Virus record (IMG/VR): IMGVR_UViG_3300032242_002041 | Coordinates: 62,001-126,000 of that record | Length of the DNA: 64,000 nucleotides | Direction: 5' to 3' (one strand) | Shown: piece after piece, positions 31,423 through 61,298 of the stretch | Numbering within the stretch: position 1 is the stretch's first letter | Layout of the letters: each line of letters opens with the position of its first letter | The notes under the pieces: generated by a model | What the model was told of the DNA's origin: nothing | Databases searched by the model: none | Seen by the model: the letters and a program-made list of their open reading frames with translations, nothing else | Program-made: the position numbers and the translations under genes

Positions 31423-31737
31423 ATGAATACTGACGAACTTATTGCTCACGGCCGCGCCCGTTTTGAACATGCGGCTGCACGACGCACCCTTAAAGAAAAA
31501 TACCAAGCCAAGCTGACATTTGCTTATAATGGTGGAATGTGGCGAGCTGGTCCAGAATTAATTAATATTTTAGCCGCTTCGTTAGAGCACGGGCAACAAG
31601 GTCTGGTACTACTTGACCTGTATGAAACTCCAATCATGGTTGATTACAAAGAACTATTAAAGTTAGCACACGAACGTTGGCAAGAACAAATGACGGCCTG
31701 GCTTGTAGAACACGAAGAACTAAACAAAAATAGATGA
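31423..31737 (+). CDS. Hypothetical protein
   Basis: 104-aa ORF coupled to the next gene by ATGA. Confidence 0.7.
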   Translation: MNTDELIAHGRARFEHAAARRTLKEKYQAKLTFAYNGGMWRAGPELINILAASLEHGQQGLVLLDLYETPIMVDYKELLKLAHERWQEQMTAWLVEHEELNKNR

Positions 31738-32486
31738 GGACAGGCGCTGTAATCTTTGCCCGCAACAATGAACAAATTGATTATGTTGCTATGGCTCGTT
31801 GGTCTGCCCGTAATATTGAGCGACATCTTGGCATTCCAACGCATATTATTACAGATGATGAACCCAACAAGAATACAAGACACTTTACAGATGTCGGAAA
31901 TGTAACCTGGCATAATCATAACCGTATGGATGCTTATCGTTTGACCCCATGGGACCGTACACTAGTGTTAGATGCTGATTATGTTGTAGCTACAGATCAA
32001 TTAAAGTCATTGCTCGAAGTAGACCAAGATTTTTTAGCACCGCGGTGGGCATATGATGTTACAGGGTGTGATGCCTTTGAAGGATTGAATTCATTTGGTG
32101 CCAATCGTATGCCCATGTGGTGGGCAACTGTGATGATGTTCCGCCGGAGTCGGCAAGCAGAATTAATTTTTAATTCAATGCAGATGATTAGAGATAACTG
32201 GACACACTATAGAAATTTGTACAAAAATACAACAACAACTTATCGCAATGATCATGCACTCAGTGTTGCATTAGGTATTGTCAACGGACATACATTAGAG
32301 CACAATAGTATTCCTTGGGCATTGGCCAGCTTAACGCCAGCACATAAGTTAACACAACTGAGCCAAGATCGATATAGGGTTGATTTTGTGAACACAGAAA
32401 ATCAAACTCGGTGGATAGAACTACGTCAAGACTTCCATGCCATGGGTAAACAACAACTGGGAGAGATCGTTGCCAATCCTTGCTGA
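31734..32486 (+). CDS. Glycosyltransferase, GT-A fold (GT8-like)
   Basis: TPWDRTLVLDADY DxD motif, RND, C-terminal H.MGK. Confidence 0.65.
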   Translation: MRTGAVIFARNNEQIDYVAMARWSARNIERHLGIPTHIITDDEPNKNTRHFTDVGNVTWHNHNRMDAYRLTPWDRTLVLDADYVVATDQLKSLLEVDQDFLAPRWAYDVTGCDAFEGLNSFGANRMPMWWATVMMFRRSRQAELIFNSMQMIRDNWTHYRNLYKNTTTTYRNDHALSVALGIVNGHTLEHNSIPWALASLTPAHKLTQLSQDRYRVDFVNTENQTRWIELRQDFHAMGKQQLGEIVANPC

Positions 32487-33198
32487 ACGTGGCTACTTAA
32501 TTCCTGCTATAGGCGACGCTTATGTAGCCTGTGCCGAACAATTGAAACAGAGTATTTTACAGTTTCATCCCAAGGCACACATAACTATCTTGACCAAAGA
32601 AATGTTACCCTATGGCGACTTGGGCGGGTTTGCCAATGACTGGCAATGTTTTGCCGCTAGTCCATATAGGCAAACTATCAAACTAGAAGCCGATATGATC
32701 TGTGCTAGCGCAATTGATCATTGGTGGACCATGTTTGAACGGCGTGACCTAGTTGTTAGCCAAGGAGCAAGAACATTTTATGATGACCCTGCTGAATCCA
32801 GATACTATAGAAAAATATTTGATACCAACAACTTGCCAGATGTTTATAATGCCATTACCTATTGGCGATTAAGTAATACAGCTAAAGAGTTTTTTGATTT
32901 GGTGCGTCAAATATTTGAACAATGGAATAGTTATCGACAATTATTAAAATTTCCAGATAATGAGCCAACTACTGATGTAGTCTACGCTATTGCCGCTGTT
33001 ATCATAGGAGTAGAAACGGTTACCTTACCTGCAGGACTAGGACTAACTATAGTACATATGAAACGCCATATCAATCCTATACAAACAGACAACTGGACAC
33101 GAGAATTAGTTTGGGAAAATAATCCATTAAGGATTAATACTGTGGCCCAGTGGGGCCTAGTGCATTATCACGTTAAGGAGTGGAACTATGAGCAATGA
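32470..33198 (+). CDS. Glycosyltransferase-like paralog (GT8-like); probable TTG start at 32470
   Basis: SPYRQTIKLEADM, TTD, VHMK and VHYH; GGAGAG before the in-frame TTG. Confidence 0.6.
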   Translation: MPILAERGYLIPAIGDAYVACAEQLKQSILQFHPKAHITILTKEMLPYGDLGGFANDWQCFAASPYRQTIKLEADMICASAIDHWWTMFERRDLVVSQGARTFYDDPAESRYYRKIFDTNNLPDVYNAITYWRLSNTAKEFFDLVRQIFEQWNSYRQLLKFPDNEPTTDVVYAIAAVIIGVETVTLPAGLGLTIVHMKRHINPIQTDNWTRELVWENNPLRINTVAQWGLVHYHVKEWNYEQ

Positions 33199-33472
33199 TC
33201 AAGATAAAACAAAACACAATACACGAATGCATCGTGCGTGGCGAGCTATTAAGAAACAACTGAATATCATTAAACAACGAAAATATTTTGGTGAGGCATC
33301 AAAACGCATCGACGAAGCACAGCCACATCGGCTTGCTAAAAAACACGCAATGGATTGCGGCCAGCCTGGTTGCGTAATATGTGGTAATCCTCGACATAAT
33401 AAATTCCACAAAGGCAAAGACAAGTTAACCACGCAAGAGCGTCGCAATAATCAAAAAAGCAATGATGAGTGA
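33188..33472 (+). CDS. Small basic Cys-motif protein
   Basis: K/R-rich; HAMDCGQPGCVICGNPR may bind Zn. Confidence 0.65.
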   Translation: MSNDQDKTKHNTRMHRAWRAIKKQLNIIKQRKYFGEASKRIDEAQPHRLAKKHAMDCGQPGCVICGNPRHNKFHKGKDKLTTQERRNNQKSNDE

Positions 33473-33821
33473 TACGCTGTTAACCGAACAAGATTTTTGG
33501 GCAATCCTACAGGCTACGCCAGAACCTAAGCCAATATTCTATAGACTGTATTACAACAACGACGGTACTCCTATTATCTACAGCATGGAGGTGTTGCCTG
33601 GTAATTACATAGACGTTGATCAGCCGACTTATGTACTAGCACCGTTTAATGTTCGGGTAGTTGACGGCAAAATCACTTATATCAAACCAGTAATTACCGT
33701 TAAAAAATTACAGCCCAATGAATCAAATGGAACTGCGTGTGATCCCAGTGATGTATGCATAGTAGTCAATGCAGATCAACCACATACAAAATGGACGATA
33801 GTAACTAATGAAATTGATTGA
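33462..33821 (+). CDS. Hypothetical protein
   Basis: 119-aa ORF overlapping both neighbours by a few nt. Confidence 0.7.
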   Translation: MMSDTLLTEQDFWAILQATPEPKPIFYRLYYNNDGTPIIYSMEVLPGNYIDVDQPTYVLAPFNVRVVDGKITYIKPVITVKKLQPNESNGTACDPSDVCIVVNADQPHTKWTIVTNEID

Positions 33822-34725
33822 CACAGCAGACTTAGACTGCATTTACCTAACATATGATGAGCCAAACGCTGAAGAAAATTGGGTTAAGATTAAGAACATG
33901 GTACCATGGGCCCGCCGTGTGGATGGTGTTAAAGGGTCAGACGCCGCCCACAAAGCAGCCGCGGATGCTAGTGATACTGATCGATTTGTGCTTGTCGATG
34001 GCGACAACATTCCAGATCCTGCGTTCTTTAATCTTACGTTAACAGTAAACGAAGTATGCGTATATCGTTGGCGTGCCAAGAATCATATCAACGGCTTAAT
34101 GTACGGCAATGGTGGCTTAAGCGTATGGTCAAAAGAATTTGTTTATGCCATGCGTACACACGAAGCAACAGATGGCTCGGTAGAAAATGATGTAGAGTTT
34201 TGTTTCTATCCCAACTACTATGCCATGCATGACTGCTATTCAACAACATACCCTAACGGGTCGGCATTCCAGGCCTGGCGAGCAGGGTTCCGCGAAGGTG
34301 TTAAGATGTGCTTAAACAAAGGAGCACGTCCTACCTTGCAAGAGTTTAAGAACCGTGTACATCAACGCAACTTAGACCATTTGACCATATGGCATAACAT
34401 AGGACGCGATGTAGACAATGGCATCTGGGCAATAGCCGGCGCTCGTATGGGCACCTATATGACCATGATTACCCCACAGTGGGACTATCGTACTGTACAA
34501 GACTTTGCTGCATTAGAAGAACTTTGGGCAACAGTCAAAGATACTAATCCTGAGTTGTTGGCTGGACGTGTAGCCGAAGACCTAGCCACACAATTAGATT
34601 TACCAATGACCACTATACTAGGACCAGAGAGTACGTTCTTTAAACAACACTACCGTTCCAACTGGCACAACCAAGGTGTTATGATTAAAGAAATTGATGT
34701 GATTAGGAATCAAGAAGGATGGTAA
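33808..34725 (+). CDS. Glycosyltransferase, GT-A fold
   Basis: YDEPNAEENW, AHKAAA, VLVDGDN (DxD), NGLMYGNGG and AWRAGFREG. Confidence 0.65.
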   Translation: MKLIDTADLDCIYLTYDEPNAEENWVKIKNMVPWARRVDGVKGSDAAHKAAADASDTDRFVLVDGDNIPDPAFFNLTLTVNEVCVYRWRAKNHINGLMYGNGGLSVWSKEFVYAMRTHEATDGSVENDVEFCFYPNYYAMHDCYSTTYPNGSAFQAWRAGFREGVKMCLNKGARPTLQEFKNRVHQRNLDHLTIWHNIGRDVDNGIWAIAGARMGTYMTMITPQWDYRTVQDFAALEELWATVKDTNPELLAGRVAEDLATQLDLPMTTILGPESTFFKQHYRSNWHNQGVMIKEIDVIRNQEGW

Positions 34726-35627
34726 GTAAAAAGATATTAATTACAGGGAGCACCGGATTTATCGGAGCCCATGTTGCAAAGTATCTTTCCAATTGTGGAT
34801 ACACAGTAATCGGTGTAGACAAAAATTTACCAAACACACCAGTTAACTTTGAGTTTATTCAATTTGACTTAACTAATCTCTGCAATAATTTACCAGATGT
34901 TGATGTTGTGTTACACCTGGCTGCATTTAATGGAACAAAATATTTTTACACAGATTCTTTTAGTGTTATTAAACAAAATATAATTCCAACTATAAATTTA
35001 CTTGAACGCTATCAAGGAAACGTTGAAAGGTTTGTGTATGCTGGATCTCCAGAAAGTACTGCTGGAGCCACCGATTTTTTTAACTATCCAATTCCAACCG
35101 ATGAACACTGTCCTCTAGTAGTAGAAGATCCAACAAATCTACGATGGAGTTATGCAGGATCAAAAGCACTCGGCGAGCAAGCAACCATTGCCTCTAAAGT
35201 GCCGTACACAATAATTAGATATAACAATATTTTTGGCCCAGGACAAGTTGATCATTTTATATCAGAATTTTATGACAGAACTCAGCAAGGAGTGTATGAA
35301 TTGTACGGTTGGGAAAATACTAGAACTTTTATGTATGTCAGCGATGCTGTTGAAGCTACCAGACAATTAATTGAGTCTAACAATGCAATGAATCAAATTG
35401 TCAATGTAGGCGGAGATCAAGAAGTTACAATATTAGAAGTAGCAAAATTTATGTTAGACAGTCTGGGAATAACAGACCAGCCGATTATTTGTAAAGATGC
35501 AGCAACCGGAAGCGCCAAACGCCGTTGTCCTGATGTTTCTAAATTAAAATTATTACTTAATTTCCAAACGCAGGTAACCTGGCAAGAAGGAATTATTAAA
35601 ACGCTCAAGGAGTTTACATGCACATAG
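34719..35627 (+). CDS. NAD-dependent nucleotide-sugar epimerase/dehydratase (extended SDR)
   Basis: ITGSTGFIG, HLAA, YAGSK (YxxxK), RYNNIFGP and TRTFMYVSDAV. Confidence 0.9.
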   Translation: MVSKKILITGSTGFIGAHVAKYLSNCGYTVIGVDKNLPNTPVNFEFIQFDLTNLCNNLPDVDVVLHLAAFNGTKYFYTDSFSVIKQNIIPTINLLERYQGNVERFVYAGSPESTAGATDFFNYPIPTDEHCPLVVEDPTNLRWSYAGSKALGEQATIASKVPYTIIRYNNIFGPGQVDHFISEFYDRTQQGVYELYGWENTRTFMYVSDAVEATRQLIESNNAMNQIVNVGGDQEVTILEVAKFMLDSLGITDQPIICKDAATGSAKRRCPDVSKLKLLLNFQTQVTWQEGIIKTLKEFTCT

Positions 35628-36421
35628 GAATCATAGGAATGGGCTGTATAGGTTCCGCTAATCAAGCTGGATTTGAATTTCTTGGGCATACTGTTGTAGG
35701 ACATGATCCTAAACTTAATACCACTATTGATATTGTAAAAAATACAGAGATTGTTTTTGTTTGTGTTCCTACTCCGAGCTATGACGATGGTGGTTGCGAT
35801 CTATCTATTATTGAAGCTGTGTTAAAAGATCTTAACAGTATCAATTACAAAGGAATTATTGCCATTCGAAGTACAGTAATTCCAGGGTTTACCCAACAGG
35901 TAATTAATAGATATACAAATTTATCTATTTGTTTTGTGCCAGAATTTTTAAGAGAACGATGTGCGGTTAATGATTTTATTAAAAATCAAAAGTTACTGGC
36001 AGTAGGAACAAATGACCGTTATATCTATCAACAAATTAAATTAGCATTTGGAACTTTGCCCGACCAAACTATACATTTAACCCCTAACGAAGCAGAGATA
36101 CTAAAGTACTTTAACAATTCGTATGCCGCATTGCGAGTGACCTTTGCCAACATCATGTATGAACTTTGTAAAAAATTTGAAGCGGACTATACAGTGGTAA
36201 AAAATGCATACATTAGCACAGGTAAAGCCGGCGATATGTACCTTGATGTTGCTCCACATTTACGAGGCTACGGAGGTAAATGTTTACCAAAAGATATTAA
36301 AGCATTGTCGTTGTTGATAAAGGAACACGGTTTACCATTTGACTTAATATCGGCTATTGATCATGACAATGATCAAATTGATACTACAGTGTTCAATGGA
36401 ATGAGGAAAGCCAATGACTAA
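35618..36421 (+). CDS. ugd: UDP-glucose/GDP-mannose dehydrogenase family protein, short form
   Basis: GIIGMG.IG, FVCVPTP, IRSTVIPG, PEFLRE, K.FNN and GYGGKCLPKD; only 267 aa. Confidence 0.85.
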   Translation: MHIGIIGMGCIGSANQAGFEFLGHTVVGHDPKLNTTIDIVKNTEIVFVCVPTPSYDDGGCDLSIIEAVLKDLNSINYKGIIAIRSTVIPGFTQQVINRYTNLSICFVPEFLRERCAVNDFIKNQKLLAVGTNDRYIYQQIKLAFGTLPDQTIHLTPNEAEILKYFNNSYAALRVTFANIMYELCKKFEADYTVVKNAYISTGKAGDMYLDVAPHLRGYGGKCLPKDIKALSLLIKEHGLPFDLISAIDHDNDQIDTTVFNGMRKAND

Positions 36422-37364
36422 CAACTATTGCGTTATCTGCACAAACGATCGACTATGGAAGCTCACGGAATTGCTGTCATTTCTTAAAGAGAATCAGGGG
36501 CAGTCGATTATACTAGATATTAATCCAGAAGCCATTGATCTTGAAAAGATCGGACTGTATAAAATACTAGATTTATTTGATTTTGAGTCAGTAATAATTT
36601 TTACATATAACCCGTTCGAGTGTCATAACAAGTACACTATAGTTTGTAAAAACACAACTGTTTTTTTAGAAGAAGCGGCAGTAGTTGATCCTTTGCTGCA
36701 CCAATGGACCAAAGATAAAATATTTTTAACTATGTATCGTCGCCCTACTGCCGGTCGCCTTGGGTTAGCAGGTCATCTGTTTGCTAACCATAATGACATT
36801 AGTCATATACATTTTTCTGCTAGTACATCAACAGATGAGCTGGAACTTTACGAAATGAATAAGTTATTAACTTACGATTTACCTTCTATCATCGATGCTG
36901 GCAAAATGATTCCTAACATGCCGTTGGAACTTGCTAGCAGTCAGTACTATTCAAAATTTGGGCTCATGTCAAATTTTGATTCTGCTCTGAGAGAGTACTA
37001 TCGACAAATATTAATTGATATTGTTGGAGAAACACATGTGTCAGGAGATACCTTTTTTCCTACAGAAAAAACCACAAGACCCATGTGGCTTAAAAAACCA
37101 TTTATAGTATTTGCTTCTAAAAACTATCTTGATTACCTACGGCAGATGGGGTTCAGAACATTTAGTGATTTTTGGCCCGAGGATTATGATGGATTTGACG
37201 GACGAGATCGTTACATTAAAATACTAGAGTTAATTGACAACTTAGCTCAAAAATCAATTGATGAACTAGAAAAAATGTACTGGGACATGCAATACACACT
37301 TGATCATAATTATAATCTTTTATTGAATCAAAACTACAACACTACCATTAGCTATCTACTATGA
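36414..37364 (+). CDS. Putative glycosyltransferase (GT10-like TEK motif), paralog 1
   Basis: DIVGET..FFPTEKTTRP..KKPFIV..LRQMGFRTF..EDYD..R. Confidence 0.5.
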   Translation: MTNNYCVICTNDRLWKLTELLSFLKENQGQSIILDINPEAIDLEKIGLYKILDLFDFESVIIFTYNPFECHNKYTIVCKNTTVFLEEAAVVDPLLHQWTKDKIFLTMYRRPTAGRLGLAGHLFANHNDISHIHFSASTSTDELELYEMNKLLTYDLPSIIDAGKMIPNMPLELASSQYYSKFGLMSNFDSALREYYRQILIDIVGETHVSGDTFFPTEKTTRPMWLKKPFIVFASKNYLDYLRQMGFRTFSDFWPEDYDGFDGRDRYIKILELIDNLAQKSIDELEKMYWDMQYTLDHNYNLLLNQNYNTTISYLL

Positions 37365-38776
37365 CAAACAAAGGCGACGAAGTCACACAGGATTTTAAAT
37401 CAAAGTTCTTAGGTGATGCAGAATTTATGAAGGAGAATCTCGGTCCAGCACTCTGCTTGGCCAAATGGAAGCAAGTTAGTCTACACTTGCCCACAGGACT
37501 TAATAACAGTTGCTATCATCCTCCCTTACATCCAATCGATGCTACCCTATTAGCAGACAATCCCAGCGCACTGCATAATACTCCGCACAAGAAAGAACAG
37601 CGTAAAATTATGCTCAAACAAGAACGCCCTGCAGAGTGTAGTTACTGCTGGGCTATGGAAGACAATAATAAACTAAGTGATCGTCACTACCGTTCTGGCG
37701 AGCCATGGGCTGCTAAAGACTTTAATATTGTTGTAAATTCAATAGGAGATGAAGATGTTATACCTAGCTATGTGGAAGTTAATTTTAATCATGCTTGTAA
37801 CTTGGCTTGTAGTTATTGTAGTCCTCAATTCAGTAGCACATGGCAGCAAGAGGTCACTAAATGGGGAGGGTATCCTACTAGTACTATTCATAACGATCCT
37901 AGTCATTTCCGTGGTCGTAATTTACCGATTCCTAACTCACAGCCTAATCCTTATGTAGATGCATTTTGGGAGTGGTGGCCTACCTTATACCCAGAATTAG
38001 AACACTTCCGTATGACCGGTGGCGAACCCATGTTGGACCGGAATACCTATAGAGTATTTGACTATGTGCTGGCCAATCCTAAACCCAACTTACATCTTAA
38101 TGTAACTAGTAACTTCAGTGTGGATGAAAAGACCTGGCAAAAGTATTTAGGCTACACAAAAGAATTATGCCAAGAAGGTCGTCTTGAACACTTTATGCAA
38201 TATATTAGTCTTGATTCATTTGGTCCACAAGCAGAATATATCCGCTACGGCTTAGACTTTGACCTACTATGGGATCGCGTTAATCAATTCCTTACAGAAG
38301 TTCCTAGTTACAATAGTGTGACGTTTATTGTCACTATGAATAATTTGAGCGTAACAGGCCTGCCTAACTTGATGGCTGGTATCTTAGGCCTACGTAAGCT
38401 GTACTCAACAACATACCAACGTGTATGGTTTGATACTCCTGTACTACGTCAGCCCGCATGGCAGAGCTTGCAGATACTACCGGAAAGCTATGCTGAACAG
38501 TTAGAATACTTGTGGGCCTGGATGCTACGTCAAATTGAAACAGAAGACACACGCTTCCAAGGATTCAAGGACTATGAAATAGCCAGACTTGACCGCGATA
38601 TTGCCTGGATGCGTGATGGACAGACGCTAGATCCTGCGTATATTAATCAATGTAAAGCAGACTTCTTTCGTTTCTTTAACGAAGCTGATCGCAGGCACGG
38701 TACAGATTTTCTTGCAACCTTTCCAGAAATGACTACCTGGTGGAAGGAGTGCGAATATCATGCTAGGCAGTCGTAA
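37361..38776 (+). CDS. Radical SAM protein with N-terminal twitch-like domain
   Basis: CLAKW..SCYHP..CSYCW; CNLACSYC; TGGEP. Confidence 0.9.
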   Translation: MTNKGDEVTQDFKSKFLGDAEFMKENLGPALCLAKWKQVSLHLPTGLNNSCYHPPLHPIDATLLADNPSALHNTPHKKEQRKIMLKQERPAECSYCWAMEDNNKLSDRHYRSGEPWAAKDFNIVVNSIGDEDVIPSYVEVNFNHACNLACSYCSPQFSSTWQQEVTKWGGYPTSTIHNDPSHFRGRNLPIPNSQPNPYVDAFWEWWPTLYPELEHFRMTGGEPMLDRNTYRVFDYVLANPKPNLHLNVTSNFSVDEKTWQKYLGYTKELCQEGRLEHFMQYISLDSFGPQAEYIRYGLDFDLLWDRVNQFLTEVPSYNSVTFIVTMNNLSVTGLPNLMAGILGLRKLYSTTYQRVWFDTPVLRQPAWQSLQILPESYAEQLEYLWAWMLRQIETEDTRFQGFKDYEIARLDRDIAWMRDGQTLDPAYINQCKADFFRFFNEADRRHGTDFLATFPEMTTWWKECEYHARQS

Positions 38777-52551: not shown

Positions 52552-52557
52552 TATTTA
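52552..52557 (-). promoter_or_regulatory. Late-type TAAATA box
   Basis: Intergenic, 6 nt before ATG 52545. Confidence 0.5.
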
Positions 52558-52581
52558 TTGACCTGTTGTGCTCTTGGACAT

Positions 52582-53607: not shown

Positions 53608-53657
53608 TCTTTCTTTGTACGATATTTAAACTAAAATTATGTTGGGAGTATTTTTTA

Positions 53658-54809: not shown

Positions 54810-55890
54810 GGAGCATGGCCTGAAGTTCTTGCCATAATACGTCAGTTAGACCACCATTATAAAAATGATTAAAGTTATGCTCTACTATGGGCAAACAAGC
54901 GCGGTGTATCGCTCGACGTTCTTTTACGCTTAATGTATCTAATTCTTTTAACAATTTAGTAACACGTTCTATTCTGAGTATATCATCTGTTTCTGTATCG
55001 TAGCTTTCATCAAATATGCCTGCAAAAGTTTGAAATCCATATTCACGCATATACTCTAAACTGCCAGCAGGTGCTACTAGAACAAATGGCATTTCTAAGG
55101 CAATTGCTTTAAATGTCTTTTCGGTTATGTGCTGTCTGCGTCCAAAGTAAACAGTTTCAGTAGGAACATATACTAGACTATCCTGCGCTTCAGTAAAGTT
55201 ACTCAGCCAGCAACTTGTCATTTCCTGTTGCTCTTCGCCACGAAATAGTCTTGGCAGTTTGGCCTGCTCAAACACATCGGTTATATCCTGGTATACATGT
55301 TGATACTTTTGTGCTATAATAGATATATCCACATTCTCATATTGGCAAGTTCTGGGCGCACTAATATGATTATGTTCTAATTGATTTTTGAATACGTTAT
55401 ATAAGAACAACACACGATGATCACGCTTGCCTGCTACAATACGATTGGGACTCATGAAGGTTTGAGTAGGAGTTCTTTCACTGGCTCTGGGAATCAAGAA
55501 AGTTTTATCATATCCACGAAACCAGTCTTGACAAGCCCAACCATGAAAGAAATAGTAGTGTGTGCGCCAACCGTATTGGGCAGAAAGTTGTTCAACATAT
55601 TCTCCACGCTCACTAACTACAATATGTCCAGGTGGATTATTGGGCCAATTGATATCTTTGTTGCGTTCAAGCACCTCCGTAAACAACGGTTTGTGTAGAT
55701 CCAAATGAACAGGTTCTTGATCATGCAAATACACATAGTCGTTTTCTGTGATATCGTCACGCCCTAGATTAAATAAGTGATCACTGTCAGTATGCCCAAA
55801 CGGATCACAAAAGAATACTCTTGTGCCCGGCCTATGTTGATTAAACCAAGGCCAAAATGTATTGTTGTAAATTTCATCTATTCTAATCAT
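54799..55890 (-). CDS. Putative glycosyltransferase (GT10-like TEK motif), paralog 3
   Basis: FMSPNR..RDHR; VPTET..ITEKTFK..MPFV..YGFQTF..DESYD..R. Confidence 0.5.
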   Translation of the reverse strand: MIRIDEIYNNTFWPWFNQHRPGTRVFFCDPFGHTDSDHLFNLGRDDITENDYVYLHDQEPVHLDLHKPLFTEVLERNKDINWPNNPPGHIVVSERGEYVEQLSAQYGWRTHYYFFHGWACQDWFRGYDKTFLIPRASERTPTQTFMSPNRIVAGKRDHRVLFLYNVFKNQLEHNHISAPRTCQYENVDISIIAQKYQHVYQDITDVFEQAKLPRLFRGEEQQEMTSCWLSNFTEAQDSLVYVPTETVYFGRRQHITEKTFKAIALEMPFVLVAPAGSLEYMREYGFQTFAGIFDESYDTETDDILRIERVTKLLKELDTLSVKERRAIHRACLPIVEHNFNHFYNGGLTDVLWQELQAMLREF

Positions 55891-58800
55891 GTTTGACGTA
55901 TTTTATTCTGGAACAAAACCTAACTTATTTGCACACGAGCGCGAAGCACGTGATATTCAACACGCACAAGAATTAAGTCGGACTCGTTACTTTTGGTGGG
56001 TAAACTATTTAACTGACTACTCGAGCTTTGACTTTTTATTTGAGCCAGTTCCTTGGGAAGCAGACTATACACACACTTGGCCCAGTCGGTGGCATGAGTA
56101 TTCTGGAACCTTTTTAGTTCCTAAGCATAACACGAATATAGATTATAAGTTCCATAAGGAAATACTTCCTTTAAAAGAATTAAAAGAACATTACTTGATT
56201 AATCATCCCTGCGAGTTTGATTGGACTTGGCATCCACATCCGATGGATCCGCCATATAATTATGTATTTGGTAATCAGTGGTATCCGGCTAATCGTATGT
56301 CTACTGTTGAATACCGTCTGCCAGGCGCAACAGAAACAAAGTATATTTTTACTCCTAGAGCACAACTATTACCCAAACTGGGCAGTCAATGGCAAACTCT
56401 AGCAGACTGTGAGTTTGATTATTCATGGAGACCAGATCCGGGCGACGCACCTTACATTTATGTATTTGGTAATCAGTGGTATCGTGCAGAGATCATGTCC
56501 ACAGTGGAATATCATGTTCCTGGTGCTACTGAGCGTAAGTACATTCCTTATCCTCGAGCTCGGCTAGTAGAAAATACCGCTAATTGGTCGGTGCCCACAG
56601 GTGTTGACAGCGTAGATTATACTTGGGTTCCGGATCCAGGAGATCCGCCATATATCTATCAATTTGGTACGCAACATCAAGCTACTGGTGGCCCGCAATA
56701 TTGTGTACCTGGAGCAACTGACATAAAGTATGTTAGTGTGTTTAGAGCAACAATTAATAGTGTTAACATGGACATGTGGACAACTTCAGATGACGTCACT
56801 GACTTTGATTATACCTGGCATCCTGATGATCGCGACCCTGCTTACATATATCAATTTGGTACACAACATCAAGCTACCGGTGGCCCCGAATACCGTGTCA
56901 CGGGCGCAACAGAAATGAAGTATGTTAGTGCTCCTAGAGCCAGTATTAGTAGTGTTGATATGACTAATTGGACAACACCCAATGATGTCACTGACTTTGA
57001 TTATACCTGGCATCCTGATGATCGCGACCCTGCTTACATATATCAATTTGGTACACAACATCAAGCTACCGGCGGTCCTAGATACGTTGTGCCTGGTGCT
57101 ACAGAAATAAAGTATGTTAGTGCTCCTAGAGCCAGACGTACTCGAGTAGACGATTGTTGGACTATTCCCAAAAATACTAATCTTGAAGCATTTGATTTAA
57201 CATGGCATCCAGACAGCCGCGAGTCTGCCTACATATATCAGTTTGCTACACAATGGAATCGTGCAGGCGGCCCTACATATCGTGCGCCAGGCGCCACTGA
57301 GATAAAATATGTTACAGCACAGGTAGCCAAGATGCTACCCACTGATCTGAACTGGGTAATACCTGCAGGTATAGACGTTAACAGTTTTGACTTTAGCTGG
57401 ACTCCTGACACTACAGAAGCTCCGTACATATACGAGTTTGGTACACAGTGGCAAAAAACTGGTGGTCCAAGATATATAGTTCCGGGCGCAACAGAAATAA
57501 AATACGTTACAGAACCTAGAGCACATAAAAACGTTAAAGATGCGTGTTGGACTGTGCCCGATGGTGCTGATGTAGACAGCTTTGATTGGACCTGGCATCC
57601 TGATGCTACTGAACAGCCTTACATATATCAGTTTGGCACACAGCATCAACGCACAGGAGGCCCACAGTACCGTGTTCCTGGAGCAACAGATACAAAGTAT
57701 GTAGATCAAATACGCATTAAGACTGATCGTGTTGCCACAGCTATCTATGAAATAGATCACATGGATGGCAACGCTGGACAAATATTGGATGCTGTTAAAA
57801 CAGTACGCTACTTTGACAATTACCTGGATACACTAAAGCGCATAGCCAAGAACATTCCTGACGACCAGGAGTTTGTTTGGATTTGTTCAAGTGTATGTGA
57901 CTACTCTGACTTTGACTTTACCTGGCATCCTGAGGTATGGCAAGCAGGTATGTTGCACGTATTTCCTAGCGACGGACAAAAGTTTGGTGATACATTCTTT
58001 ATGCATGTTCCTACATTTAAGTATCGTAGTGAAAAGCTACAATTACTTGATTGGTACGATATAAACTTTATGGATAAGAATGTGCCGCGTCGCCCTTTGC
58101 CTGTTGTTAACCATACATATGATACACACGTAGACGCAGTTAAGAGCTTGGACTTTAAAGGACCGTTGGCTATTTTTACTACCCAAGATTCAACCTACTG
58201 CAACATAAATCACTTGCTCACTGATAATACACCAGCTGTTCCGTTATGGCGTGAAAAGACCAAGACTGTTGTTCCGTTAAGTGCAGGCGCCAGTATTTGT
58301 ATTGTGCCCAAGGTCTCAGTTCCTTATATTAAACATCAGTTATACGACTATCCTAACGTACTCCGCACCCAGCGTCATCTGTTTAAAGATCAACTGTTAG
58401 ATATAGTGTTTATCGACAACGGCGAACCCAACGCAGAAGAAAATTATCAACACTTAAAATGGACAGCTGAACGTGCCAATGACATTAAGATACATCGTAG
58501 TAGTGGTGTCACAGGTCGTGTGGCTGCTTATCAAGCTGCCGCAGAGTTAAGCACAACACCTTGGTTCTTTGCTGTATTTGCCAAGTTAAGAGTCGACGAA
58601 GGGTTTGACTGGGCATGGCAACCAGATCGTCTACAAGAATCCAAGCACTATATCTTTCATGCACGTAATCCTGTTAACGGATTAGAATACGGACATCAAG
58701 CCATGATTGCCTACAACAAGAAACTAGTGTTGGCAAACGCCGGGGACGGACTAGACTTTACCCTAGATCAAGCGCACGAAGTAGTTCCTATCTTGTCCGG

Positions 58801-59086
58801 TACAGCAGAATATGCGTACACACCTTGGATGGCCTGGCGCACTGCTTTCCGCGAATGTATTAAGCTACGAGCCAGTGCGGATGTAGAAAGCAAGTATCGC
58901 TTGGACAAATGGTTAACAGTTGATCTAACGCATTCCAACGGTGAATATAGTATATTCGGGGCCCAAGATGCTGTGGAGTACTACGAAGCGGTTGCGGGAG
59001 ATTTTGCGGAGCTAAAGCGGAGCTATGATTGGGCTTGGCTAGCTAGTTACGCATTGATAAAGCGGAATCTAATACCGAGTCAATGA
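55889..59086 (+). CDS. 1065-aa protein with eight ~64-aa repeats and a C-terminal GT-A-like domain
   Basis: Repeat FDxTWHPD..YIYQFGTQ..TGGPxYxVPGATExKYV; C-terminus matches 33808 (EPNAEEN, NGLEYG, AWRTAFRE). Confidence 0.75.
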   Translation: MFDVFYSGTKPNLFAHEREARDIQHAQELSRTRYFWWVNYLTDYSSFDFLFEPVPWEADYTHTWPSRWHEYSGTFLVPKHNTNIDYKFHKEILPLKELKEHYLINHPCEFDWTWHPHPMDPPYNYVFGNQWYPANRMSTVEYRLPGATETKYIFTPRAQLLPKLGSQWQTLADCEFDYSWRPDPGDAPYIYVFGNQWYRAEIMSTVEYHVPGATERKYIPYPRARLVENTANWSVPTGVDSVDYTWVPDPGDPPYIYQFGTQHQATGGPQYCVPGATDIKYVSVFRATINSVNMDMWTTSDDVTDFDYTWHPDDRDPAYIYQFGTQHQATGGPEYRVTGATEMKYVSAPRASISSVDMTNWTTPNDVTDFDYTWHPDDRDPAYIYQFGTQHQATGGPRYVVPGATEIKYVSAPRARRTRVDDCWTIPKNTNLEAFDLTWHPDSRESAYIYQFATQWNRAGGPTYRAPGATEIKYVTAQVAKMLPTDLNWVIPAGIDVNSFDFSWTPDTTEAPYIYEFGTQWQKTGGPRYIVPGATEIKYVTEPRAHKNVKDACWTVPDGADVDSFDWTWHPDATEQPYIYQFGTQHQRTGGPQYRVPGATDTKYVDQIRIKTDRVATAIYEIDHMDGNAGQILDAVKTVRYFDNYLDTLKRIAKNIPDDQEFVWICSSVCDYSDFDFTWHPEVWQAGMLHVFPSDGQKFGDTFFMHVPTFKYRSEKLQLLDWYDINFMDKNVPRRPLPVVNHTYDTHVDAVKSLDFKGPLAIFTTQDSTYCNINHLLTDNTPAVPLWREKTKTVVPLSAGASICIVPKVSVPYIKHQLYDYPNVLRTQRHLFKDQLLDIVFIDNGEPNAEENYQHLKWTAERANDIKIHRSSGVTGRVAAYQAAAELSTTPWFFAVFAKLRVDEGFDWAWQPDRLQESKHYIFHARNPVNGLEYGHQAMIAYNKKLVLANAGDGLDFTLDQAHEVVPILSGTAEYAYTPWMAWRTAFRECIKLRASADVESKYRLDKWLTVDLTHSNGEYSIFGAQDAVEYYEAVAGDFAELKRSYDWAWLASYALIKRNLIPSQ
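56795..57072 (+). repeat. Exact 86-nt direct repeat at a 192-nt period within the coding repeat array
   Basis: 56795-56880 is identical to 56987-57072. Confidence 0.9.
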
Positions 59087-60128
59087 TATACTCAACTTCC
59101 AAGTCGGTAAGTTCAGGATGAATAGGTAAACTTAATACTCTACGTGATAGTGCGCTAGCAACACTTAGGATATCGGGGCCAGCAAACTCACTATAAGCAG
59201 GCAACTCGTGTAGGGGTTCTCGATAGTGAATCCTAGTTTCGATTCCTTTGATAGCCAAGTTTCGAGCAAGTATATCTCTACCGTCTACATCAATAACAAA
59301 CTTGTGACACGAATGTGTTTCAAAGTTTTGTGCTGTAATTAAACTTCTAATGCCGGTATTCTTTAACCGACCAATCCAGTACAAGGCAATGTTCTTACGG
59401 CGGTCCTGCCATTGATCAATATACCGTGTTTTAATCATCATTTGGGCGCATTCTACCTCGCTCATACGACTGTTAGTTCCTATGGTTGAATGATTGGGCT
59501 TGCCGTTGTTAGTCCATTCTCTAGCAAATTCTAATAGATCTATGTCGTCTGTGACCACTGCACCCCCGTTACCGTAGGCATTTAAGTTTTTCATTGGATC
59601 AAAACTAATAGCAGTAGCGTTGCCTACTCTATTACAATTGTTGCTTAACCAATGCTGAGCACCGTCTTCTATGATCAAGTCCGTTCCCCAGAAACGGTCT
59701 GCATTGACAGCCGCACCGTATAAGCCAACCAACACTGTTGCCTGTACACTTAGTTCTTGTGGTATTTTTTTCTTATCTAACAGGCCGTGTGTATCTGTGT
59801 CAGCAATATATACTTCCCAACCAGCACGGACAAATGCACTAGCAGTGGCCACATAAGTCATTGCGGGTACAACTACCCTGGGCGGGTTTACACTAGTTTG
59901 TAATCGATAGTATTCAGCAATTATTTCTAATGCTTGACTACCCGAGTGACAAGTTACAGCATATTTGCTATGATTTTTCTTGGCCAACCAGTTTTCAAAT
60001 TCAGCTGTATAGTTACCAGCCATGAGTTGACCACTACGAAGGACTTCGTCGGTAGCATCTAATATCTCTGTGCGGAGATTATTATACTGCTTTTTTAATC
60101 CCGTAAAAGGAATCTTTAAGCCATTCAT
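59043..60128 (-). CDS. DegT/DnrJ/EryC1/StrS PLP-dependent sugar aminotransferase
   Basis: SGSQAL, EDGAQ, SFDPMKNL.AYGNGG, GTNSRM and LSLPIHP. Confidence 0.93.
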   Translation of the reverse strand: MNGLKIPFTGLKKQYNNLRTEILDATDEVLRSGQLMAGNYTAEFENWLAKKNHSKYAVTCHSGSQALEIIAEYYRLQTSVNPPRVVVPAMTYVATASAFVRAGWEVYIADTDTHGLLDKKKIPQELSVQATVLVGLYGAAVNADRFWGTDLIIEDGAQHWLSNNCNRVGNATAISFDPMKNLNAYGNGGAVVTDDIDLLEFAREWTNNGKPNHSTIGTNSRMSEVECAQMMIKTRYIDQWQDRRKNIALYWIGRLKNTGIRSLITAQNFETHSCHKFVIDVDGRDILARNLAIKGIETRIHYREPLHELPAYSEFAGPDILSVASALSRRVLSLPIHPELTDLEVEYIIDSVLDSALSMRN

Positions 60129-61062
60129 AGTATTCTTGGAACCCTTGTTCTATATCAATTTCTGGAGTATAACCAAAGTCCTGGTGTGCTCTTTGTGTAT
60201 TTAACTGACCACGGTTAGGAAAGTTTTCGTCAGGATCACGCACTTCAATTGTGCCTTGCCCTGCTATACTGACTGCCAGTTTAGCTGCTTCTAATAGAGT
60301 TTTAGAGTTCCCACGAGTTATGTTGTAGGTGGTGTTATAGGTATCTTCACTAATGGCGGCTTCAGCAATACCTTCGGCTGCATCAGAAACATAAGTAAAA
60401 TCTAGTTCCTGATTACCACCACGCACCTGTATAGCGTGGCCGCGCATGGCATCTAATAGGAATTTTGATACTACACGATCTTCTACATCAAGTGGGCCAT
60501 ATACTGCACTGGGTCTTATAATAGTGTGTGCCATGTTGGTACGCCTGCTGTAATCACGGACTAGCCATTCTCCGGCCAACTTCATTATACCATACTGCCC
60601 AATTGGATTGGTTGGATGACTTTCGTTGACGCCATCAAAGTAGGTATCATTGAAATTGCCATAGACCATACTTGAGCTAACATAAACAAATTTTTGTACA
60701 CGATGTTTAACGCTGGCTTCTAACAGGTTAAGCAAGCCCTCACTCATGGACCGTGAGCCCAGCTGTGGGTCGGCATTGACTACTTTTTGTCTAGGGAAAC
60801 TGGCTAGGTGTACAACAATATCAGGACGATGCTCACCAATTAGCCAGGCAATACCGTCGCGGTCCGTGATGTCAATGCCGTAGATTCTATCAGTTTTAAT
60901 TTTTTTCTTACGTTCACAAATTAGATAATCTAGCTCGTCTTGAGGTATAATGCCATAGGTTGTCTGCGTATCAGTGATGATGCAGGTGTGTCCTTGACTT
61001 TCTAACAAGGCCACAACATTATGCCCTATAAAGCCAAGTCCACCAGTTACAAGTATTTTCAT
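60082..61062 (-). CDS. NAD-dependent nucleotide-sugar epimerase/dehydratase; start revised to 61062
   Basis: ILVTGGLGFIG, SSSMVYG, YGIMK, RPSAVYGP and DFTYVSD; ATGA overlap with the upstream stop. Confidence 0.92.
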   Translation of the reverse strand: MKILVTGGLGFIGHNVVALLESQGHTCIITDTQTTYGIIPQDELDYLICERKKKIKTDRIYGIDITDRDGIAWLIGEHRPDIVVHLASFPRQKVVNADPQLGSRSMSEGLLNLLEASVKHRVQKFVYVSSSMVYGNFNDTYFDGVNESHPTNPIGQYGIMKLAGEWLVRDYSRRTNMAHTIIRPSAVYGPLDVEDRVVSKFLLDAMRGHAIQVRGGNQELDFTYVSDAAEGIAEAAISEDTYNTTYNITRGNSKTLLEAAKLAVSIAGQGTIEVRDPDENFPNRGQLNTQRAHQDFGYTPEIDIEQGFQEYYEWLKDSFYGIKKAV

Positions 61063-61298
61063 TTGCCCCACCGTAGTAAATATTCTGTTGCTAATCGATC
61101 TTCAAGTTGACCGTAGACAATAATTCTATGTCCCCAACGATGATCGTCTGGCCGTACAATGTATTGTGGATCTGGACAATTGGCTTTAATCCACTGTCCT
61201 TGTTCTGTCTGCATAAACTTGTACAATGGTTCCGCGGCATAGAGCTCTGGATCCTCTACATCGCCCATGGTAAAGGAGTGGAATGTAATCTTCTGCAT
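61059..61298 (-). CDS. Hypothetical protein
   Basis: 79 aa with its own promoter; coupled to the epimerase. Confidence 0.7.
   Translation of the reverse strand: MQKITFHSFTMGDVEDPELYAAEPLYKFMQTEQGQWIKANCPDPQYIVRPDDHRWGHRIIVYGQLEDRLATEYLLRWGK

What the first reader, a model, noticed from the sequence alone, without database searches (positions are those of the whole stretch)
31423..61298. ~30 kb phage-encoded radical SAM / glycosyltransferase island with an aminoglycoside-like tailoring toolkit
Seen: directly after the tail/fibre genes are nine radical SAM genes, about seven GT-like genes in three families, a UDP-sugar dehydrogenase, two SDR epimerases, a DegT aminotransferase, a NodU/TobZ-type carbamoyltransferase, an amidinotransferase and an SGNH-like protein, mostly translationally coupled. 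Known: these families build and decorate amino sugars in aminoglycoside and surface-glycan pathways (BtrN/NeoN radical SAM oxidation or epimerisation, StsC/BtrR transamination, StrB1 amidination, TobZ carbamoylation). Inference: the phage makes a complex carbamoylated/amidinated glycan. The adjacent Thr/Ser-rich virion proteins are the most natural acceptors; DNA hypermodification or host-surface remodelling are alternatives. No flippase, polymerase or membrane-anchored GT was recognised, which argues against a captured O-antigen locus.
Basis: partly seen in the sequence, partly recalled or inferred. Interest (0 to 1): 0.92.

Follow-up and report, generated by a model that had tools for sequence, protein, structure and literature searches.

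The report
Jumbo-phage radical-SAM glycan-tailoring island
An uncultivated freshwater jumbo phage carries, right after its tail-fibre genes, a conserved 30-kb block of soluble sugar-building and sugar-decorating enzymes, including nine radical SAM enzymes of an uncharacterised family; it most likely makes an unusual decorated glycan, but what carries that glycan is still unknown.

Summary
Window 31352-61106 is a compact, tightly overlapping gene block. It holds nine radical SAM (rSAM) genes, eight of them in NCBIfam NF033640 (twitch domain at the N-terminus). It also holds an amidinotransferase, a NodU/CmcH-type carbamoyltransferase, a DegT aminotransferase, two SDR enzymes, a short UDP-sugar-dehydrogenase-like ORF, and three paralogue families of seven GT-like genes.

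Only one of those three families (three genes) is shown to have a glycosyltransferase fold (GT-B). The other two show only a DxD-type motif.

The island is not a chimera or a captured bacterial locus. The same order recurs in 80 viral contigs and in two complete ~350-kb relatives. Its GC content matches the rest of the phage, and it has no membrane proteins.

Five rSAMs, the 305-aa 33808 protein, a cyclophilin-like protein and the carbamoyl- and amidino-transferases keep a fixed order, with variable cassettes between them.

The island has its own conserved hairpin plus a sigma-70-like promoter.

The usual entry enzymes for DNA hypermodification, a sugar nucleotidylyltransferase and a 2-deoxy-scyllo-inosose synthase were not found.

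Best reading: a cytoplasmic glycan-tailoring module that starts from host NDP-sugars. The Ser/Thr-rich fibre proteins are the most likely acceptors, but this is unproven.

The parts
31371..31390 (+). GC-rich hairpin (8 bp stem, 4 nt loop) just after the stop of fibre gene 30368-31351. It marks the left boundary of the island.
   Evidence: Conserved in relatives: 97.6% of cells are paired and 4 of 8 pairs show changes on both sides; 0 of 500 shuffles reach this.
31388..31416 (+). Sigma-70-like promoter TTTACC-17-TATAAT. The -10 element ends 6 nt before the ATG at 31423, so the mRNA may be leaderless.
   Evidence: The TAYAAT sits at a fixed distance in nearly all 43 relatives. Eleven other promoters of the same class occur in the genome.
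31423..31737 (+). 104-aa conserved protein of unknown function; first gene of the operon.
   Evidence: Found in 46 loci at a median 62% identity. No family hit.
31734..32486 (+). 250-aa protein of the phrog_1903 family. Possibly GT-A-like (LDADY motif), unverified.
32437..33198 (+). 253-aa paralogue of the previous gene (phrog_1903).
   Evidence: E 9e-11.
33188..33472 (+). 94-aa accessory ORF (phrog_4499).
33462..33821 (+). 119-aa conserved protein of unknown function.
   Evidence: Found in 65 loci. No family hit.
33808..34725 (+). 305-aa core protein. It has a GT-A-like motif (a YDEP strand and a nearly invariant D-G-D); the fold is unverified.
   Evidence: Found in 72 loci at 72% identity. 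Glyco_tranf_2_3 E 0.013 at the DxD region. hhalign puts it in register with WcaA, but at 0.5% probability. The family has 1354 clusters at 50% identity.
34719..35627 (+). SDR NDP-sugar epimerase/dehydratase (accessory).
   Evidence: Pfam Epimerase 2.9e-33. No ortholog at 50% identity or more in the loci.
35618..36421 (+). Short (267 aa) UDP-Glc/GDP-Man dehydrogenase-like ORF that lacks the C-terminal domain (accessory).
36414..37364 (+). GT-B-family paralogue (family A).
37361..38776 (+). Core rSAM 1 (N-terminal twitch).
   Evidence: NF033640 296 bits. Found in 78 loci at 74% identity.
38760..39842 (+). GT-B glycosyltransferase-fold protein (family A; the one modelled).
   Evidence: AF2 pLDDT 89.5. 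Foldseek hits EXT1/2, the H. pylori alpha1,3-FucT and WaaG at probability 0.96-1.0; MurG, GT4 and POGLUT1. Shares the TEK..KP..PF motif.
39835..41172 (+). Core rSAM 2.
   Evidence: NF033640 291 bits. Found in 79 loci at 71% identity.
41153..42412 (+). Core rSAM 3.
   Evidence: NF033640 381 bits. Found in 80 loci at 75% identity. At least 7393 homologues at E<=1e-10.
42409..43626 (+). Core rSAM 4.
   Evidence: NF033640 329 bits. Found in 77 loci at 67% identity.
43613..44908 (+). Core rSAM 5.
   Evidence: NF033640 285 bits. Found in 75 loci at 72% identity.
44889..45944 (+). 351-aa core protein: a cyclophilin-like barrel with a helical insert; function unknown.
   Evidence: AF2 pLDDT 83. No Foldseek match in the PDB. 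Cyclophilins at Z about 8. Uncharacterised AFDB clusters at TM 0.75-0.81. Cyclophil_like2.
46035..46568 (+). 177-aa ORF absent from the 80 IMG/VR relatives, flanked by 103-nt direct repeats (45925-46027 and 46548-46650). Probably an inserted cassette.
   Evidence: A weak homologue sits in L103.
46653..48107 (+). NodU/CmcH-type carbamoyltransferase (core).
   Evidence: Carbam_trans_C 7e-49 and Carbam_trans_N 1e-31. Found in 70 loci at 66% identity.
48107..48886 (+). 259-aa ORF with an N-terminal GDS motif (SGNH-like, unverified; accessory).
   Evidence: no family hit. GDSL families occur in relatives' islands.
48892..50178 (+). Accessory rSAM 6.
   Evidence: NF033640 231 bits. Found in 3 loci at 50% identity or more.
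50175..51482 (-). Accessory rSAM 7.
   Evidence: NF033640 222 bits.
51445..52545 (-). Accessory rSAM 8. It has an N-terminal SPASM hit but is below the NF033640 cut-off. A late-like AATAAATA motif lies 7 nt upstream.
52582..53607 (-). Amidinotransferase (core).
   Evidence: Profile versus AGAT 1.1e-23, SxtG, HsvA and StrB1, with the catalytic Cys and His aligned. Found in 46 loci at 81% identity.
53658..54809 (-). Accessory rSAM 9.
   Evidence: NF033640 216 bits.
54799..55890 (-). GT-B-family paralogue (family A).
   Evidence: Conserved in G001 and G002.
55889..59086 (+). 1065-aa protein with about nine tandem ~65-aa repeats (residues 110-630) and a C-terminal domain homologous to 33808-34725.
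   Evidence: Family lengths range from 850 to 1850 aa. Conserved in G001 and G002.
59043..60128 (-). DegT/DnrJ/EryC1 sugar aminotransferase.
   Evidence: Pfam 4.8e-55. Nearest solved structures: 7b0d, DesV, QdtB and WbpE. 62-65% identical in G001 and G002.
60082..61071 (-). SDR NDP-sugar epimerase/4,6-dehydratase-like enzyme; right end of the island.
   Evidence: Pfam 1.1e-44. Nearest solved structures: GalE and dTDP-glucose 4,6-dehydratases. 59% identical in G001 and G002.

Best explanation
The island is a phage-owned, cytoplasmic module for building and tailoring a glycan.

Shown:
- It encodes NDP-sugar-type enzymes: two SDRs and a DegT aminotransferase closest to C3-type sugar aminotransferases.
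- It encodes three GT-B-fold transferases, a carbamoyltransferase and an amidinotransferase.
- It encodes nine soluble rSAM enzymes, each with an auxiliary-cluster domain at the N-terminus.
- The gene order is kept across a widespread lineage of ~350-kb phages.
- The island starts at its own hairpin and sigma-70-like promoter.

Inferred:
- Host NDP-sugars are the input, because the phages encode no sugar nucleotidylyltransferase. They are oxidised or dehydrated and then transaminated to amino-deoxy sugars.
- The GT-B enzymes, and perhaps the four GT-A-like proteins, assemble an oligosaccharide on a soluble acceptor.
- The amidinotransferase turns a sugar amine into a guanidino group, and the carbamoyltransferase O-carbamoylates a hydroxyl.
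- The five core rSAMs are old, non-redundant paralogues. Each would carry out a different radical step on the sugar or glycan, such as oxidation, epimerisation, deoxygenation or C-C/C-methyl chemistry.
- Swappable cassettes between the core genes vary the product from phage to phage.
- The most likely acceptor is a virion surface protein, first of all the Ser/Thr-rich fibre proteins encoded just upstream.

Rough confidence: about 0.75 for 'glycan tailoring module' and about 0.4 for 'the acceptor is a virion protein'.
For: - Enzyme families.
- GT-B fold.
- Accessory genes in relatives' islands are sugar-pathway families: GDP-mannose dehydratase at 4e-73, other SDRs, FkbM and other methyltransferases, GDSL, a GHMP kinase, DegT and a cupin.
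- No NTP_transferase in 5 genomes, while 14 of 14 control genomes were positive.
- No membrane proteins in the island.
- Synteny and the core/variable layout.
- Orthologues are 62-81% identical but paralogues only 20-31%.
- Always downstream of the fibre genes.
- 30368-31351 is 31.5% Ser+Thr against a genome median of 11.7%, and this is conserved in 47 orthologues.
- The complete relatives each encode two A-type Fe-S carriers, which fits a heavy Fe-S load.
Against: - No glycan, acceptor or activity has been observed.
- Four of the seven GT-like genes are unverified.
- No rSAM matches any family of known function over its cut-off or any solved structure by sequence. Most SPASM/twitch rSAMs of known function modify peptides (my knowledge).
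- The island is not part of the late fibre operon. A terminator-like hairpin and an early-type promoter separate them. The known phage virion-glycosylation GTs sit inside structural operons (my knowledge of Freeman et al. 2023).
- In Vibrio phage K566, the same rSAM family sits away from the structural genes.
- Adjacency may only reflect a conserved genome order.
Confidence: 0.45

Rival explanations
1. DNA hypermodification. The GTs and tailoring enzymes build a charged (guanidino or carbamoyl) sugar on a base of the phage DNA to block host nucleases, as T-even phages do with glucosyl-hmC.
For: The enzymes are soluble and an early-type promoter heads the island. Early expression is typical of DNA-modification genes (my knowledge of T4). 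Phage GTs that hypermodify DNA with diverse glycans are known (Pyle et al. 2024, as cited in PMC12619734). Variable cassettes fit an arms race with restriction systems.
Against: There is no thymidylate-synthase-family hydroxymethylase in the window's genome or in four relatives 97-100% complete, and no TGT/DpdA. There is no TET/JBP either, although that control was silent, so this is weak evidence. No kinase or transferase typical of hm-pyrimidine pathways was seen.
Confidence: 0.13
2. Remodelling of the host envelope or a host polysaccharide during infection, for example to exclude superinfecting phages, using the host's lipid carrier and export machinery.
For: The sugar-pathway content resembles surface-glycan loci. 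The early-type promoter fits. A PagP-like lipid A gene lies near the rSAM cluster of Vibrio phage K566.
Against: The island has no initiating phosphoglycosyltransferase, flippase, polymerase, ligase or any polytopic membrane protein. It is a fixed feature of a lytic-type jumbo myophage lineage.
Confidence: 0.1
3. Synthesis of a free small molecule (a guanidino/carbamoyl pseudo-oligosaccharide or nucleoside-like metabolite) that acts on the host or on competitors.
For: The combination of aminotransferase, amidinotransferase, carbamoyltransferase and twitch rSAM recalls aminoglycoside and nucleoside-antibiotic clusters (my knowledge). DegT's best solved relative is a glutamine:scyllo-inositol transaminase. 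A distant version of the rSAM, carbamoyl- and amidino-transferase set lies on a 255-kb contig of a Bdellovibrionales MAG, where the window's baseplate protein found no match.
Against: There is no DHQ-synthase-type cyclase, and no exporter or resistance gene in the island. Up to seven GT-like genes and a 1065-aa repeat protein fit a polymer or a protein-linked product better.
Confidence: 0.1
4. Mainly a protein-modification system. The twitch rSAMs act directly on virion or other phage proteins (cross-links, epimerisation, hydroxylation-like chemistry), and sugars are only one of several decorations.
For: SPASM/twitch rSAMs are mostly peptide or protein maturases (my knowledge; the weak secondary hits are to such maturases). 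The genome holds 17 rSAM ORFs scattered well beyond the island. The distant L104 locus adds Asp/Arg-hydroxylase-family genes.
Against: No precursor-peptide-like gene or RiPP recognition element was recognised. The constant partners are sugar-type enzymes.
Confidence: 0.12

Closest known systems
Mycobacteriophage virion O-glycosylation (Freeman et al. 2023, Cell Host Microbe; cited in PMC12619734)
   Same: Phage-encoded soluble glycosyltransferases lie next to structural genes, and Ser/Thr-rich parts of virion proteins are the acceptors.
   Different: That system has a few GTs inside the structural operon and no rSAM, amidino- or carbamoyl-transferase (my knowledge). Here there are about 29 genes in a separate transcription unit, and the acceptor is unproven.
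Giant-virus glycosylation machineries (Mimivirus fibril glycans, chlorovirus capsid glycans) and the LPS-like gene clusters of cyanomyophages (my knowledge)
   Same: The virus encodes its own NDP-sugar tailoring enzymes plus GTs and works in the cytoplasm, independently of host membrane pathways.
   Different: To my knowledge, no multi-rSAM arrays have been reported in them. Those viruses usually also make the NDP-sugars themselves, whereas here no nucleotidylyltransferase was found.
Phage DNA glycosyl hypermodification (T4 alpha/beta-GT; Pyle et al. 2024, cited)
   Same: Soluble phage GTs, early expression and variation between related phages.
   Different: It needs a 5-hydroxymethylpyrimidine or similar entry enzyme, and none was found here.
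Aminoglycoside tailoring enzymes: BtrN-type twitch rSAM, StsC/BtrR aminotransferases, StrB1 amidinotransferase, TobZ carbamoyltransferase (my knowledge; StrB1 and AGAT hits)
   Same: The same enzyme superfamilies occur together in one cluster.
   Different: No aminocyclitol-forming cyclase is present. The twitch domain is at the N-terminus, not the C-terminus. No rSAM reaches the cut-off of BlsE, MoaA or other known families. The setting is a phage, with no resistance or export genes.
rSAM-rich marine T4-like environmental viral genomes (Nishimura et al. 2017, PMC5332604)
   Same: A phage genome with a dozen rSAM genes together with A-type Fe-S carrier genes.
   Different: That paper read them as part of Fe-S metabolism. 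It described no island structure and no link to sugar enzymes.

Membership tests
NCBIfam NF033640 (N_Twi_rSAM, twitch domain-containing radical SAM protein) | Whole-protein score at or above the curated cut-off of 170 bits | tested here: met
   Eight of nine ORFs score 216-381 bits; 51445-52545 scores only 39.5 bits and is not a member.
NCBIfam NF033640 (N_Twi_rSAM, twitch domain-containing radical SAM protein) | A CxxxCxxC radical SAM cluster motif preceded by an N-terminal Cys-rich auxiliary-cluster domain | tested here: met
   CxxxCxxC is present in all nine. In alignment A7, C32, C92 and C95 are invariant and C51 nearly so, upstream of C139/C143/C146. Pfam SPASM hits lie at residues 8-98, ahead of Radical_SAM.
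Amidinotransferase (AGAT/StrB1 family) | Sequence-profile match over the fold, with the C-terminal catalytic Cys and the active-site His | tested here: met
   E 1.1e-23 to AGAT and 5e-17 to StrB1. The Cys in GGISC aligns with the Cys in GGFHC of AGAT, and the His in DGHGDA aligns with NPHIDA.
NodU/CmcH/TobZ carbamoyltransferase | Both Carbam_trans_N and Carbam_trans_C domains over the Pfam cut-offs | tested here: met
   111 and 166 bits against cut-offs of 24 and 27. It is not a NodU equivalog: 132 bits against a cut-off of 1000.
GT-B fold glycosyltransferase (family A: 36414, 38760, 54799) | A two-Rossmann-domain GT-B fold matching solved glycosyltransferases | tested here: met
   Model pLDDT 89.5. 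The top Foldseek hits in the PDB and Swiss-Prot are almost all GT-B glycosyltransferases, at probability 0.9-1.0 but TM only 0.35-0.49.
CAZy GT10 fucosyltransferase | A sequence match to Pfam Glyco_transf_10 | tested here: not met
   No Pfam hit. There is only an Atlas feature lead at 0.80 and a TEK..KP motif that I recall resembling the GT10 motif.
GT-A glycosyltransferase (GT2/GT8-like) for the 33808/55889C family and the 31734/32437 family | A significant profile or fold match to GT-A enzymes that includes the DxD motif | tested here: inconclusive
   Glyco_tranf_2_3 E 0.013 in 4 of 15 members. NleB E 0.59 at the DxD region. hhalign against WaaJ/WaaO and WcaA/WcaE gives probability of 3% or less, although the DxD regions align in register.
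2-deoxystreptamine/aminocyclitol aminoglycoside pathway | A sugar-phosphate cyclase of the DHQ-synthase family (2-deoxy-scyllo-inosose synthase) | tested here: not met
   PF01761 is absent from the window's genome and four near-complete relatives; the control was positive in 11 genomes.
Wzx/Wzy-type O-antigen or capsule locus | An initiating phosphoglycosyltransferase, a flippase and a polymerase (polytopic membrane proteins) | tested here: not met
   The hydropathy scan finds no protein with two or more membrane-like segments in the island. No such Pfam families were hit.
Phage DNA glycosyl-hypermodification system | An enzyme that creates the attachment point (dCMP/dUMP hydroxymethylase, TET/JBP or DpdA/TGT) | tested here: not met
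   PF00303 and PF01702 are absent from 5 genomes with positive controls. PF12851 is also absent, but its control was silent.
Phage virion protein glycosylation | A glycan covalently bound to a virion protein | not testable with these tools
   Only context is available: the adjacent fibre genes and a conserved 27-37% Ser+Thr in the 30368 family.

The most novel reading that the evidence does not exclude
N-terminal-twitch rSAM enzymes are a virus-centred family of glycan-tailoring radical enzymes. In this lineage, five of them act in series with an amidinotransferase and a carbamoyltransferase to make a guanidinylated, carbamoylated, radically rearranged glycan coat on the fibres of ~350-kb phages. 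This would be glycan chemistry with no described counterpart, diversified by cassette exchange under selection from hosts.
Probability: 0.3. Interest if true: 0.85.

Novelty: new variant of a known kind. Interest (0 to 1): 0.68.

Why it matters
Virus-encoded glycosylation is known from giant viruses and a few phages. A conserved phage module that joins five to nine radical SAM enzymes of an uncharacterised family to sugar aminotransfer, amidination and carbamoylation has not been described in the literature I could search.

The lineage is common in metagenomes: at least 7393 homologues of one rSAM, on contigs up to 352 kb.

- If the product coats virions, it bears on phage host range, stability and immune or defence recognition.
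- If it decorates DNA, it would be a new route of hypermodification.
- Either way, it gives NF033640 its first testable substrate context and a compact set of about ten core genes to reconstitute.

Tried and rejected
- Near-identical DNA search against 50,697 phage records found no match.
- The T4 late promoter TATAAATA is absent from the window. A looser NATAAATA motif does mark late-type genes.
- The generic promoter/terminator scan gave no more hits than chance.
- Sequence-profile searches of the PDB for 44889, 33808 (both a thin and a 49-sequence alignment), 55889 and rSAM 3 found nothing significant.
- hhalign of the two putative GT-A families against E. coli GT8 (WaaJ/WaaO) and GT2 (WcaA/WcaE) references was not significant.
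- Only the source DNA sample holds the region and no RNA run does, so transcription could not be checked and read laying was not used.
- The 'moraphage' lineage paper (PMC12619734) mentions core glycosyltransferases but no radical SAM, so it could not be tied to this lineage.
- Assembly chimera and captured bacterial locus are rejected on synteny and GC content.
- The aminoglycoside-pathway reading is rejected as a membership claim.

Full report
**Where the window lies**

The window is bases 62001-126000 of a single 228,286-bp virus record. IMG/VR classes the record as linear, and CheckV rates it 66% complete.

Upstream of the finding lie:
- T4-type baseplate genes: hub, gp25-like and a 1141-aa wedge protein (PHROGs).
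- A 4454-aa virion structural protein.
- Fibre-like genes at 28668-31351.
- A late sigma factor at 2281-3372(-).

The wedge protein is only 32-35% identical to those of Rak2-like, Atu_ph07-like and SCTP-2-like giant phages. No deposited phage matches the island's DNA. This is therefore an uncultivated jumbo myophage.

Yes. ORF calling and Pfam give nine radical SAM ORFs, all with CxxxCxxC. They also give two SDR epimerase/dehydratases, a DegT aminotransferase, a carbamoyltransferase with both family domains, and a short UDP-glucose/GDP-mannose-dehydrogenase-like ORF.

The amidinotransferase has no Pfam hit. A profile built from 15 orthologues matches human AGAT at 1e-23, and SxtG, HsvA and StrB1 at 1e-18 to 5e-17. 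The catalytic Cys and the His align.

The rSAMs are paralogues at 20-31% identity. Eight pass the curated cut-off of NCBIfam NF033640, 'twitch domain-containing radical SAM protein'. Their Cys-rich auxiliary domain lies N-terminal to the radical SAM core (Pfam SPASM at residues 8-98; invariant Cys columns). None reaches the cut-off of any family of known function or matches a solved structure by sequence.

All 15 junctions between 31423 and 45944 overlap. A hydropathy scan finds no polytopic membrane protein in the island.

**The glycosyltransferase count**

- Family A (36414, 38760, 54799) shares a TEK..KP..PF..GF.TF..DESYD block. An AlphaFold model of 38760 (pLDDT 89.5) matches almost only GT-B glycosyltransferases: EXT1/EXT2, the H. 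pylori alpha1,3-fucosyltransferase, WaaG, MurG, trehalose-phosphate synthases and POGLUT1. TM-scores are modest (0.35-0.49), as expected for two-domain enzymes, but the probabilities are 0.9-1.0.
- For the 33808 family (which includes the C-terminus of 55889) and for the phrog_1903 pair (31734, 32437), I found only motif-level support. Each has a hydrophobic strand followed by an acidic patch, and a nearly invariant D-x-D. Supporting hits are weak: Glyco_tranf_2_3 at E 0.013 in 4 of 15 members and NleB at E 0.59. hhalign puts the DxD regions in register with E. coli WcaA, but at negligible probability.

So three GTs are supported and four remain candidates.

The dehydrogenase-like ORF lacks the C-terminal domain and is present in only 1 of 80 relatives. 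The 'SGNH-like' ORF has a GDS motif only.

**Not a chimera and not a recent capture**

A scan of IMG/VR with rSAM 3 found 207 related stretches. The 80 kept are 72-88% identical.

Within +/-10 kb, 46-80 of the 80 loci hold orthologues of 33808, rSAM 1-5, 44889, the carbamoyltransferase and the amidinotransferase, at 62-81% identity.

Two complete relatives have terminal repeats and 100% CheckV completeness (G001 at 352,754 bp and G002 at 346,856 bp). They carry the whole island in the same place and order, from the giant protein and fibres through to DegT and the SDR.

GC content in the island (0.37-0.45) matches the rest of the window. The big protein database holds at least 7393 homologues of rSAM 3 at E<=1e-10, on contigs up to 352 kb.

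**Core and cassettes**

The core genes keep a fixed order, while the spacing between some of them varies:
- 0-5.1 kb between 33808 and rSAM 1, in 15 size classes.
- 0-3.1 kb between the carbamoyl- and amidino-transferases in relatives, and 4.5 kb in the window.

In the window these slots hold an SDR, the short dehydrogenase, a GT-B paralogue, the GDS-motif ORF and rSAMs 6-8. rSAM 9, just beyond the amidinotransferase, also has no close orthologue in the relatives. So the window has five core and four accessory rSAMs.

A Pfam census of 39 accessory gene clusters from relatives' islands shows GDP-mannose 4,6-dehydratase (4e-73), other SDRs, several methyltransferases including FkbM-type, GDSL hydrolases, an AMP-binding enzyme, DegT, a GHMP kinase, a cupin and further rSAMs. 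This is the repertoire of nucleotide-sugar and glycan tailoring, and it supports the central inference.

None of five genomes encodes a sugar-1-phosphate nucleotidylyltransferase, so host NDP-sugars are the probable input. DegT is closest to 7b0d, DesV, QdtB and WbpE. The conserved SDR is closest to GalE and dTDP-glucose 4,6-dehydratases.

**Other core parts**

- 44889 folds confidently (pLDDT 83) as a cyclophilin-like barrel with a helical insert. Its only clear relatives are uncharacterised proteins.
- 55889 is a 1065-aa protein with about nine tandem ~65-aa repeats, followed by a domain homologous to 33808. Its family ranges from 850 to 1850 aa. Its role is open: a scaffold, a binding module or even an acceptor.

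**Transcription**

Between the fibre gene and the first island gene lies a GC hairpin (31371-31390). It is followed by TTTACC-17-TATAAT, with the -10 element ending 6 nt before the ATG.

The layout is conserved in the relatives. The hairpin shows compensatory changes at 4 of 8 pairs, and 97.6% of cells are paired; 0 of 500 shuffles reach this.

Promoters of the same class (TTGACC..GTAGTATAAT) precede eleven other genes, mostly small ORFs outside the structural block. A NATAAATA motif sits 5-44 nt upstream of 17 ORFs, including fibre gene 29332 and rSAM 8.

By analogy with T4 (my knowledge), the island is probably read by host sigma-70 RNA polymerase early or in the middle of infection, and not as part of the late fibre operon. 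This is an inference: no RNA data exist for this phage.

**Which acceptor?**

*DNA.* Complete relatives lack a thymidylate-synthase-family hydroxymethylase and a TGT/DpdA. TET/JBP was not found either, but that control did not ring. The known routes to glycosylated or deazaguanine DNA are therefore missing.

*Host envelope.* No lipid-carrier, flippase, polymerase or ligase functions are present.

*Free aminoglycoside-like metabolite.* There is no DHQ-synthase-type cyclase, and no exporter or resistance gene.

*Virion proteins.* The island always follows the fibre genes. The adjacent 30368 protein is 31.5% Ser+Thr against a genome median of 11.7%, which is conserved at 27-37% in 47 orthologues. 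Four other structural-region proteins of 830-1779 aa are 25-34% Ser+Thr.

This last evidence is circumstantial, and the separate early-type promoter argues mildly against it. I rank virion-protein glycosylation first at about 0.4, with the four rivals at about 0.1 each.

**Wider context**

- The genome holds 17 rSAM ORFs, including two B12-binding ones.
- The four near-complete relatives (97-100% complete) have about 8-17 NF033640 members each, while none of 14 control cellular genomes has one over the cut-off.
- Each of those four relatives encodes two A-type Fe-S carriers. This echoes the marine T4-like genome with 12 rSAM genes noted by Nishimura et al. 2017 (PMC5332604).
- Smaller NF033640-like arrays exist in Vibrio phages K566/K567 and Ralstonia phage RsoM2USA.
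- A distant version holding rSAMs, a carbamoyltransferase (33% identity), an amidinotransferase (32%) and Asp/Arg-hydroxylase-family genes lies on a 255-kb contig of a Bdellovibrionales MAG.
- Two phage contigs of this lineage are binned in a Haliscomenobacter MAG. This is a weak host hint.

**Verdict**

The 'complex decorated glycan' reading is the best available. 'Aminoglycoside-like' should be read as a resemblance of superfamilies only, and the acceptor remains open. It is a new variant of virus-encoded glycosylation machinery, built around an uncharacterised radical SAM family. The literature I could search holds no description of it.

Noticed in passing
window 1-1222 (-), running off the left end; genome 57190-58200, 143362-146387, 152716-154637, 179715-180890 and 188088-189161: Eight more rSAM ORFs lie outside the island, 17 in all. 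Among them are an NF033640 member with a 125-aa N-terminal extension next to the SbcCD-like genes, and two divergent B12-binding rSAM (methyltransferase-like) genes.
   Followed up: partly
whole genome; for example window 31388-31416 and 29281-29288: There are two promoter-like classes. The first is a sigma-70-like TTGACC-N17-GTAGTATAAT, often only 6-8 nt from the start codon, which suggests leaderless mRNAs. The second is a NATAAATA motif 5-44 nt upstream of 17 ORFs. The exact T4 late box TATAAATA occurs 0 times in the window against 6.5 expected.
   Followed up: partly
window 45925-46027 and 46548-46650: A 103-nt direct repeat (80% identity) brackets ORF 46035-46568. That ORF is absent from all 80 relatives, so it looks like a recently inserted cassette.
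   Followed up: partly
window 55889-59086 (+): About nine tandem ~65-aa repeats (FDxxWxPD..PYIYxFGxQ..GGPxYxVPGATxxKY). Family members range from 850 to 1850 aa, so the repeat number probably varies. The start codon overlaps, divergently, the start of 54799-55890(-).
   Followed up: partly
window 15153-28517 (+): A single 4454-aa ORF matches a PHROG virion structural protein (E 6e-262), directly after the baseplate wedge gene.
   Followed up: no
L101 and L102 (NZ_JBBAKG010000003.1 and NZ_JBBAKG010000001.1): Two contigs (148 kb and 183 kb) of a 'Haliscomenobacter sp.' MAG are phage genomes of this lineage: the island and the baseplate wedge are 67-74% identical. This is either mis-binning or a host hint.
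   Followed up: partly
L103/L104 (JANPLN010000015.1, 255,862 bp): A Bdellovibrionales MAG contig carries a distant version: at least six rSAM genes (four with N-terminal SPASM hits), a carbamoyltransferase, an amidinotransferase, a 46035 homologue and two Asp_Arg_Hydrox genes. I could not settle whether the contig is bacterial or another large phage.
   Followed up: partly
relatives G001-G004 (for example G001:C1:22998-23303): Each near-complete relative encodes two A-type Fe-S cluster carrier proteins (PF01521). None is present in the 228 kb recovered for the window's genome.
   Followed up: no
genome about 135.2-136.0 kb, 146.4 kb and 157.7 kb (outside the window): tRNA-like sequences are visible in intergenic stretches upstream of several ORFs. 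They were not scanned with ARAGORN.
   Followed up: no
L001 (Vibrio phage K566, record 160-171 kb and 177.9-178.9 kb): A KVP40-sized vibriophage has five NF033640-like rSAM genes (one of them an unannotated ORF) among hypothetical genes. They lie near NAD-salvage genes and a PagP-like gene, not near structural genes.
   Followed up: partly
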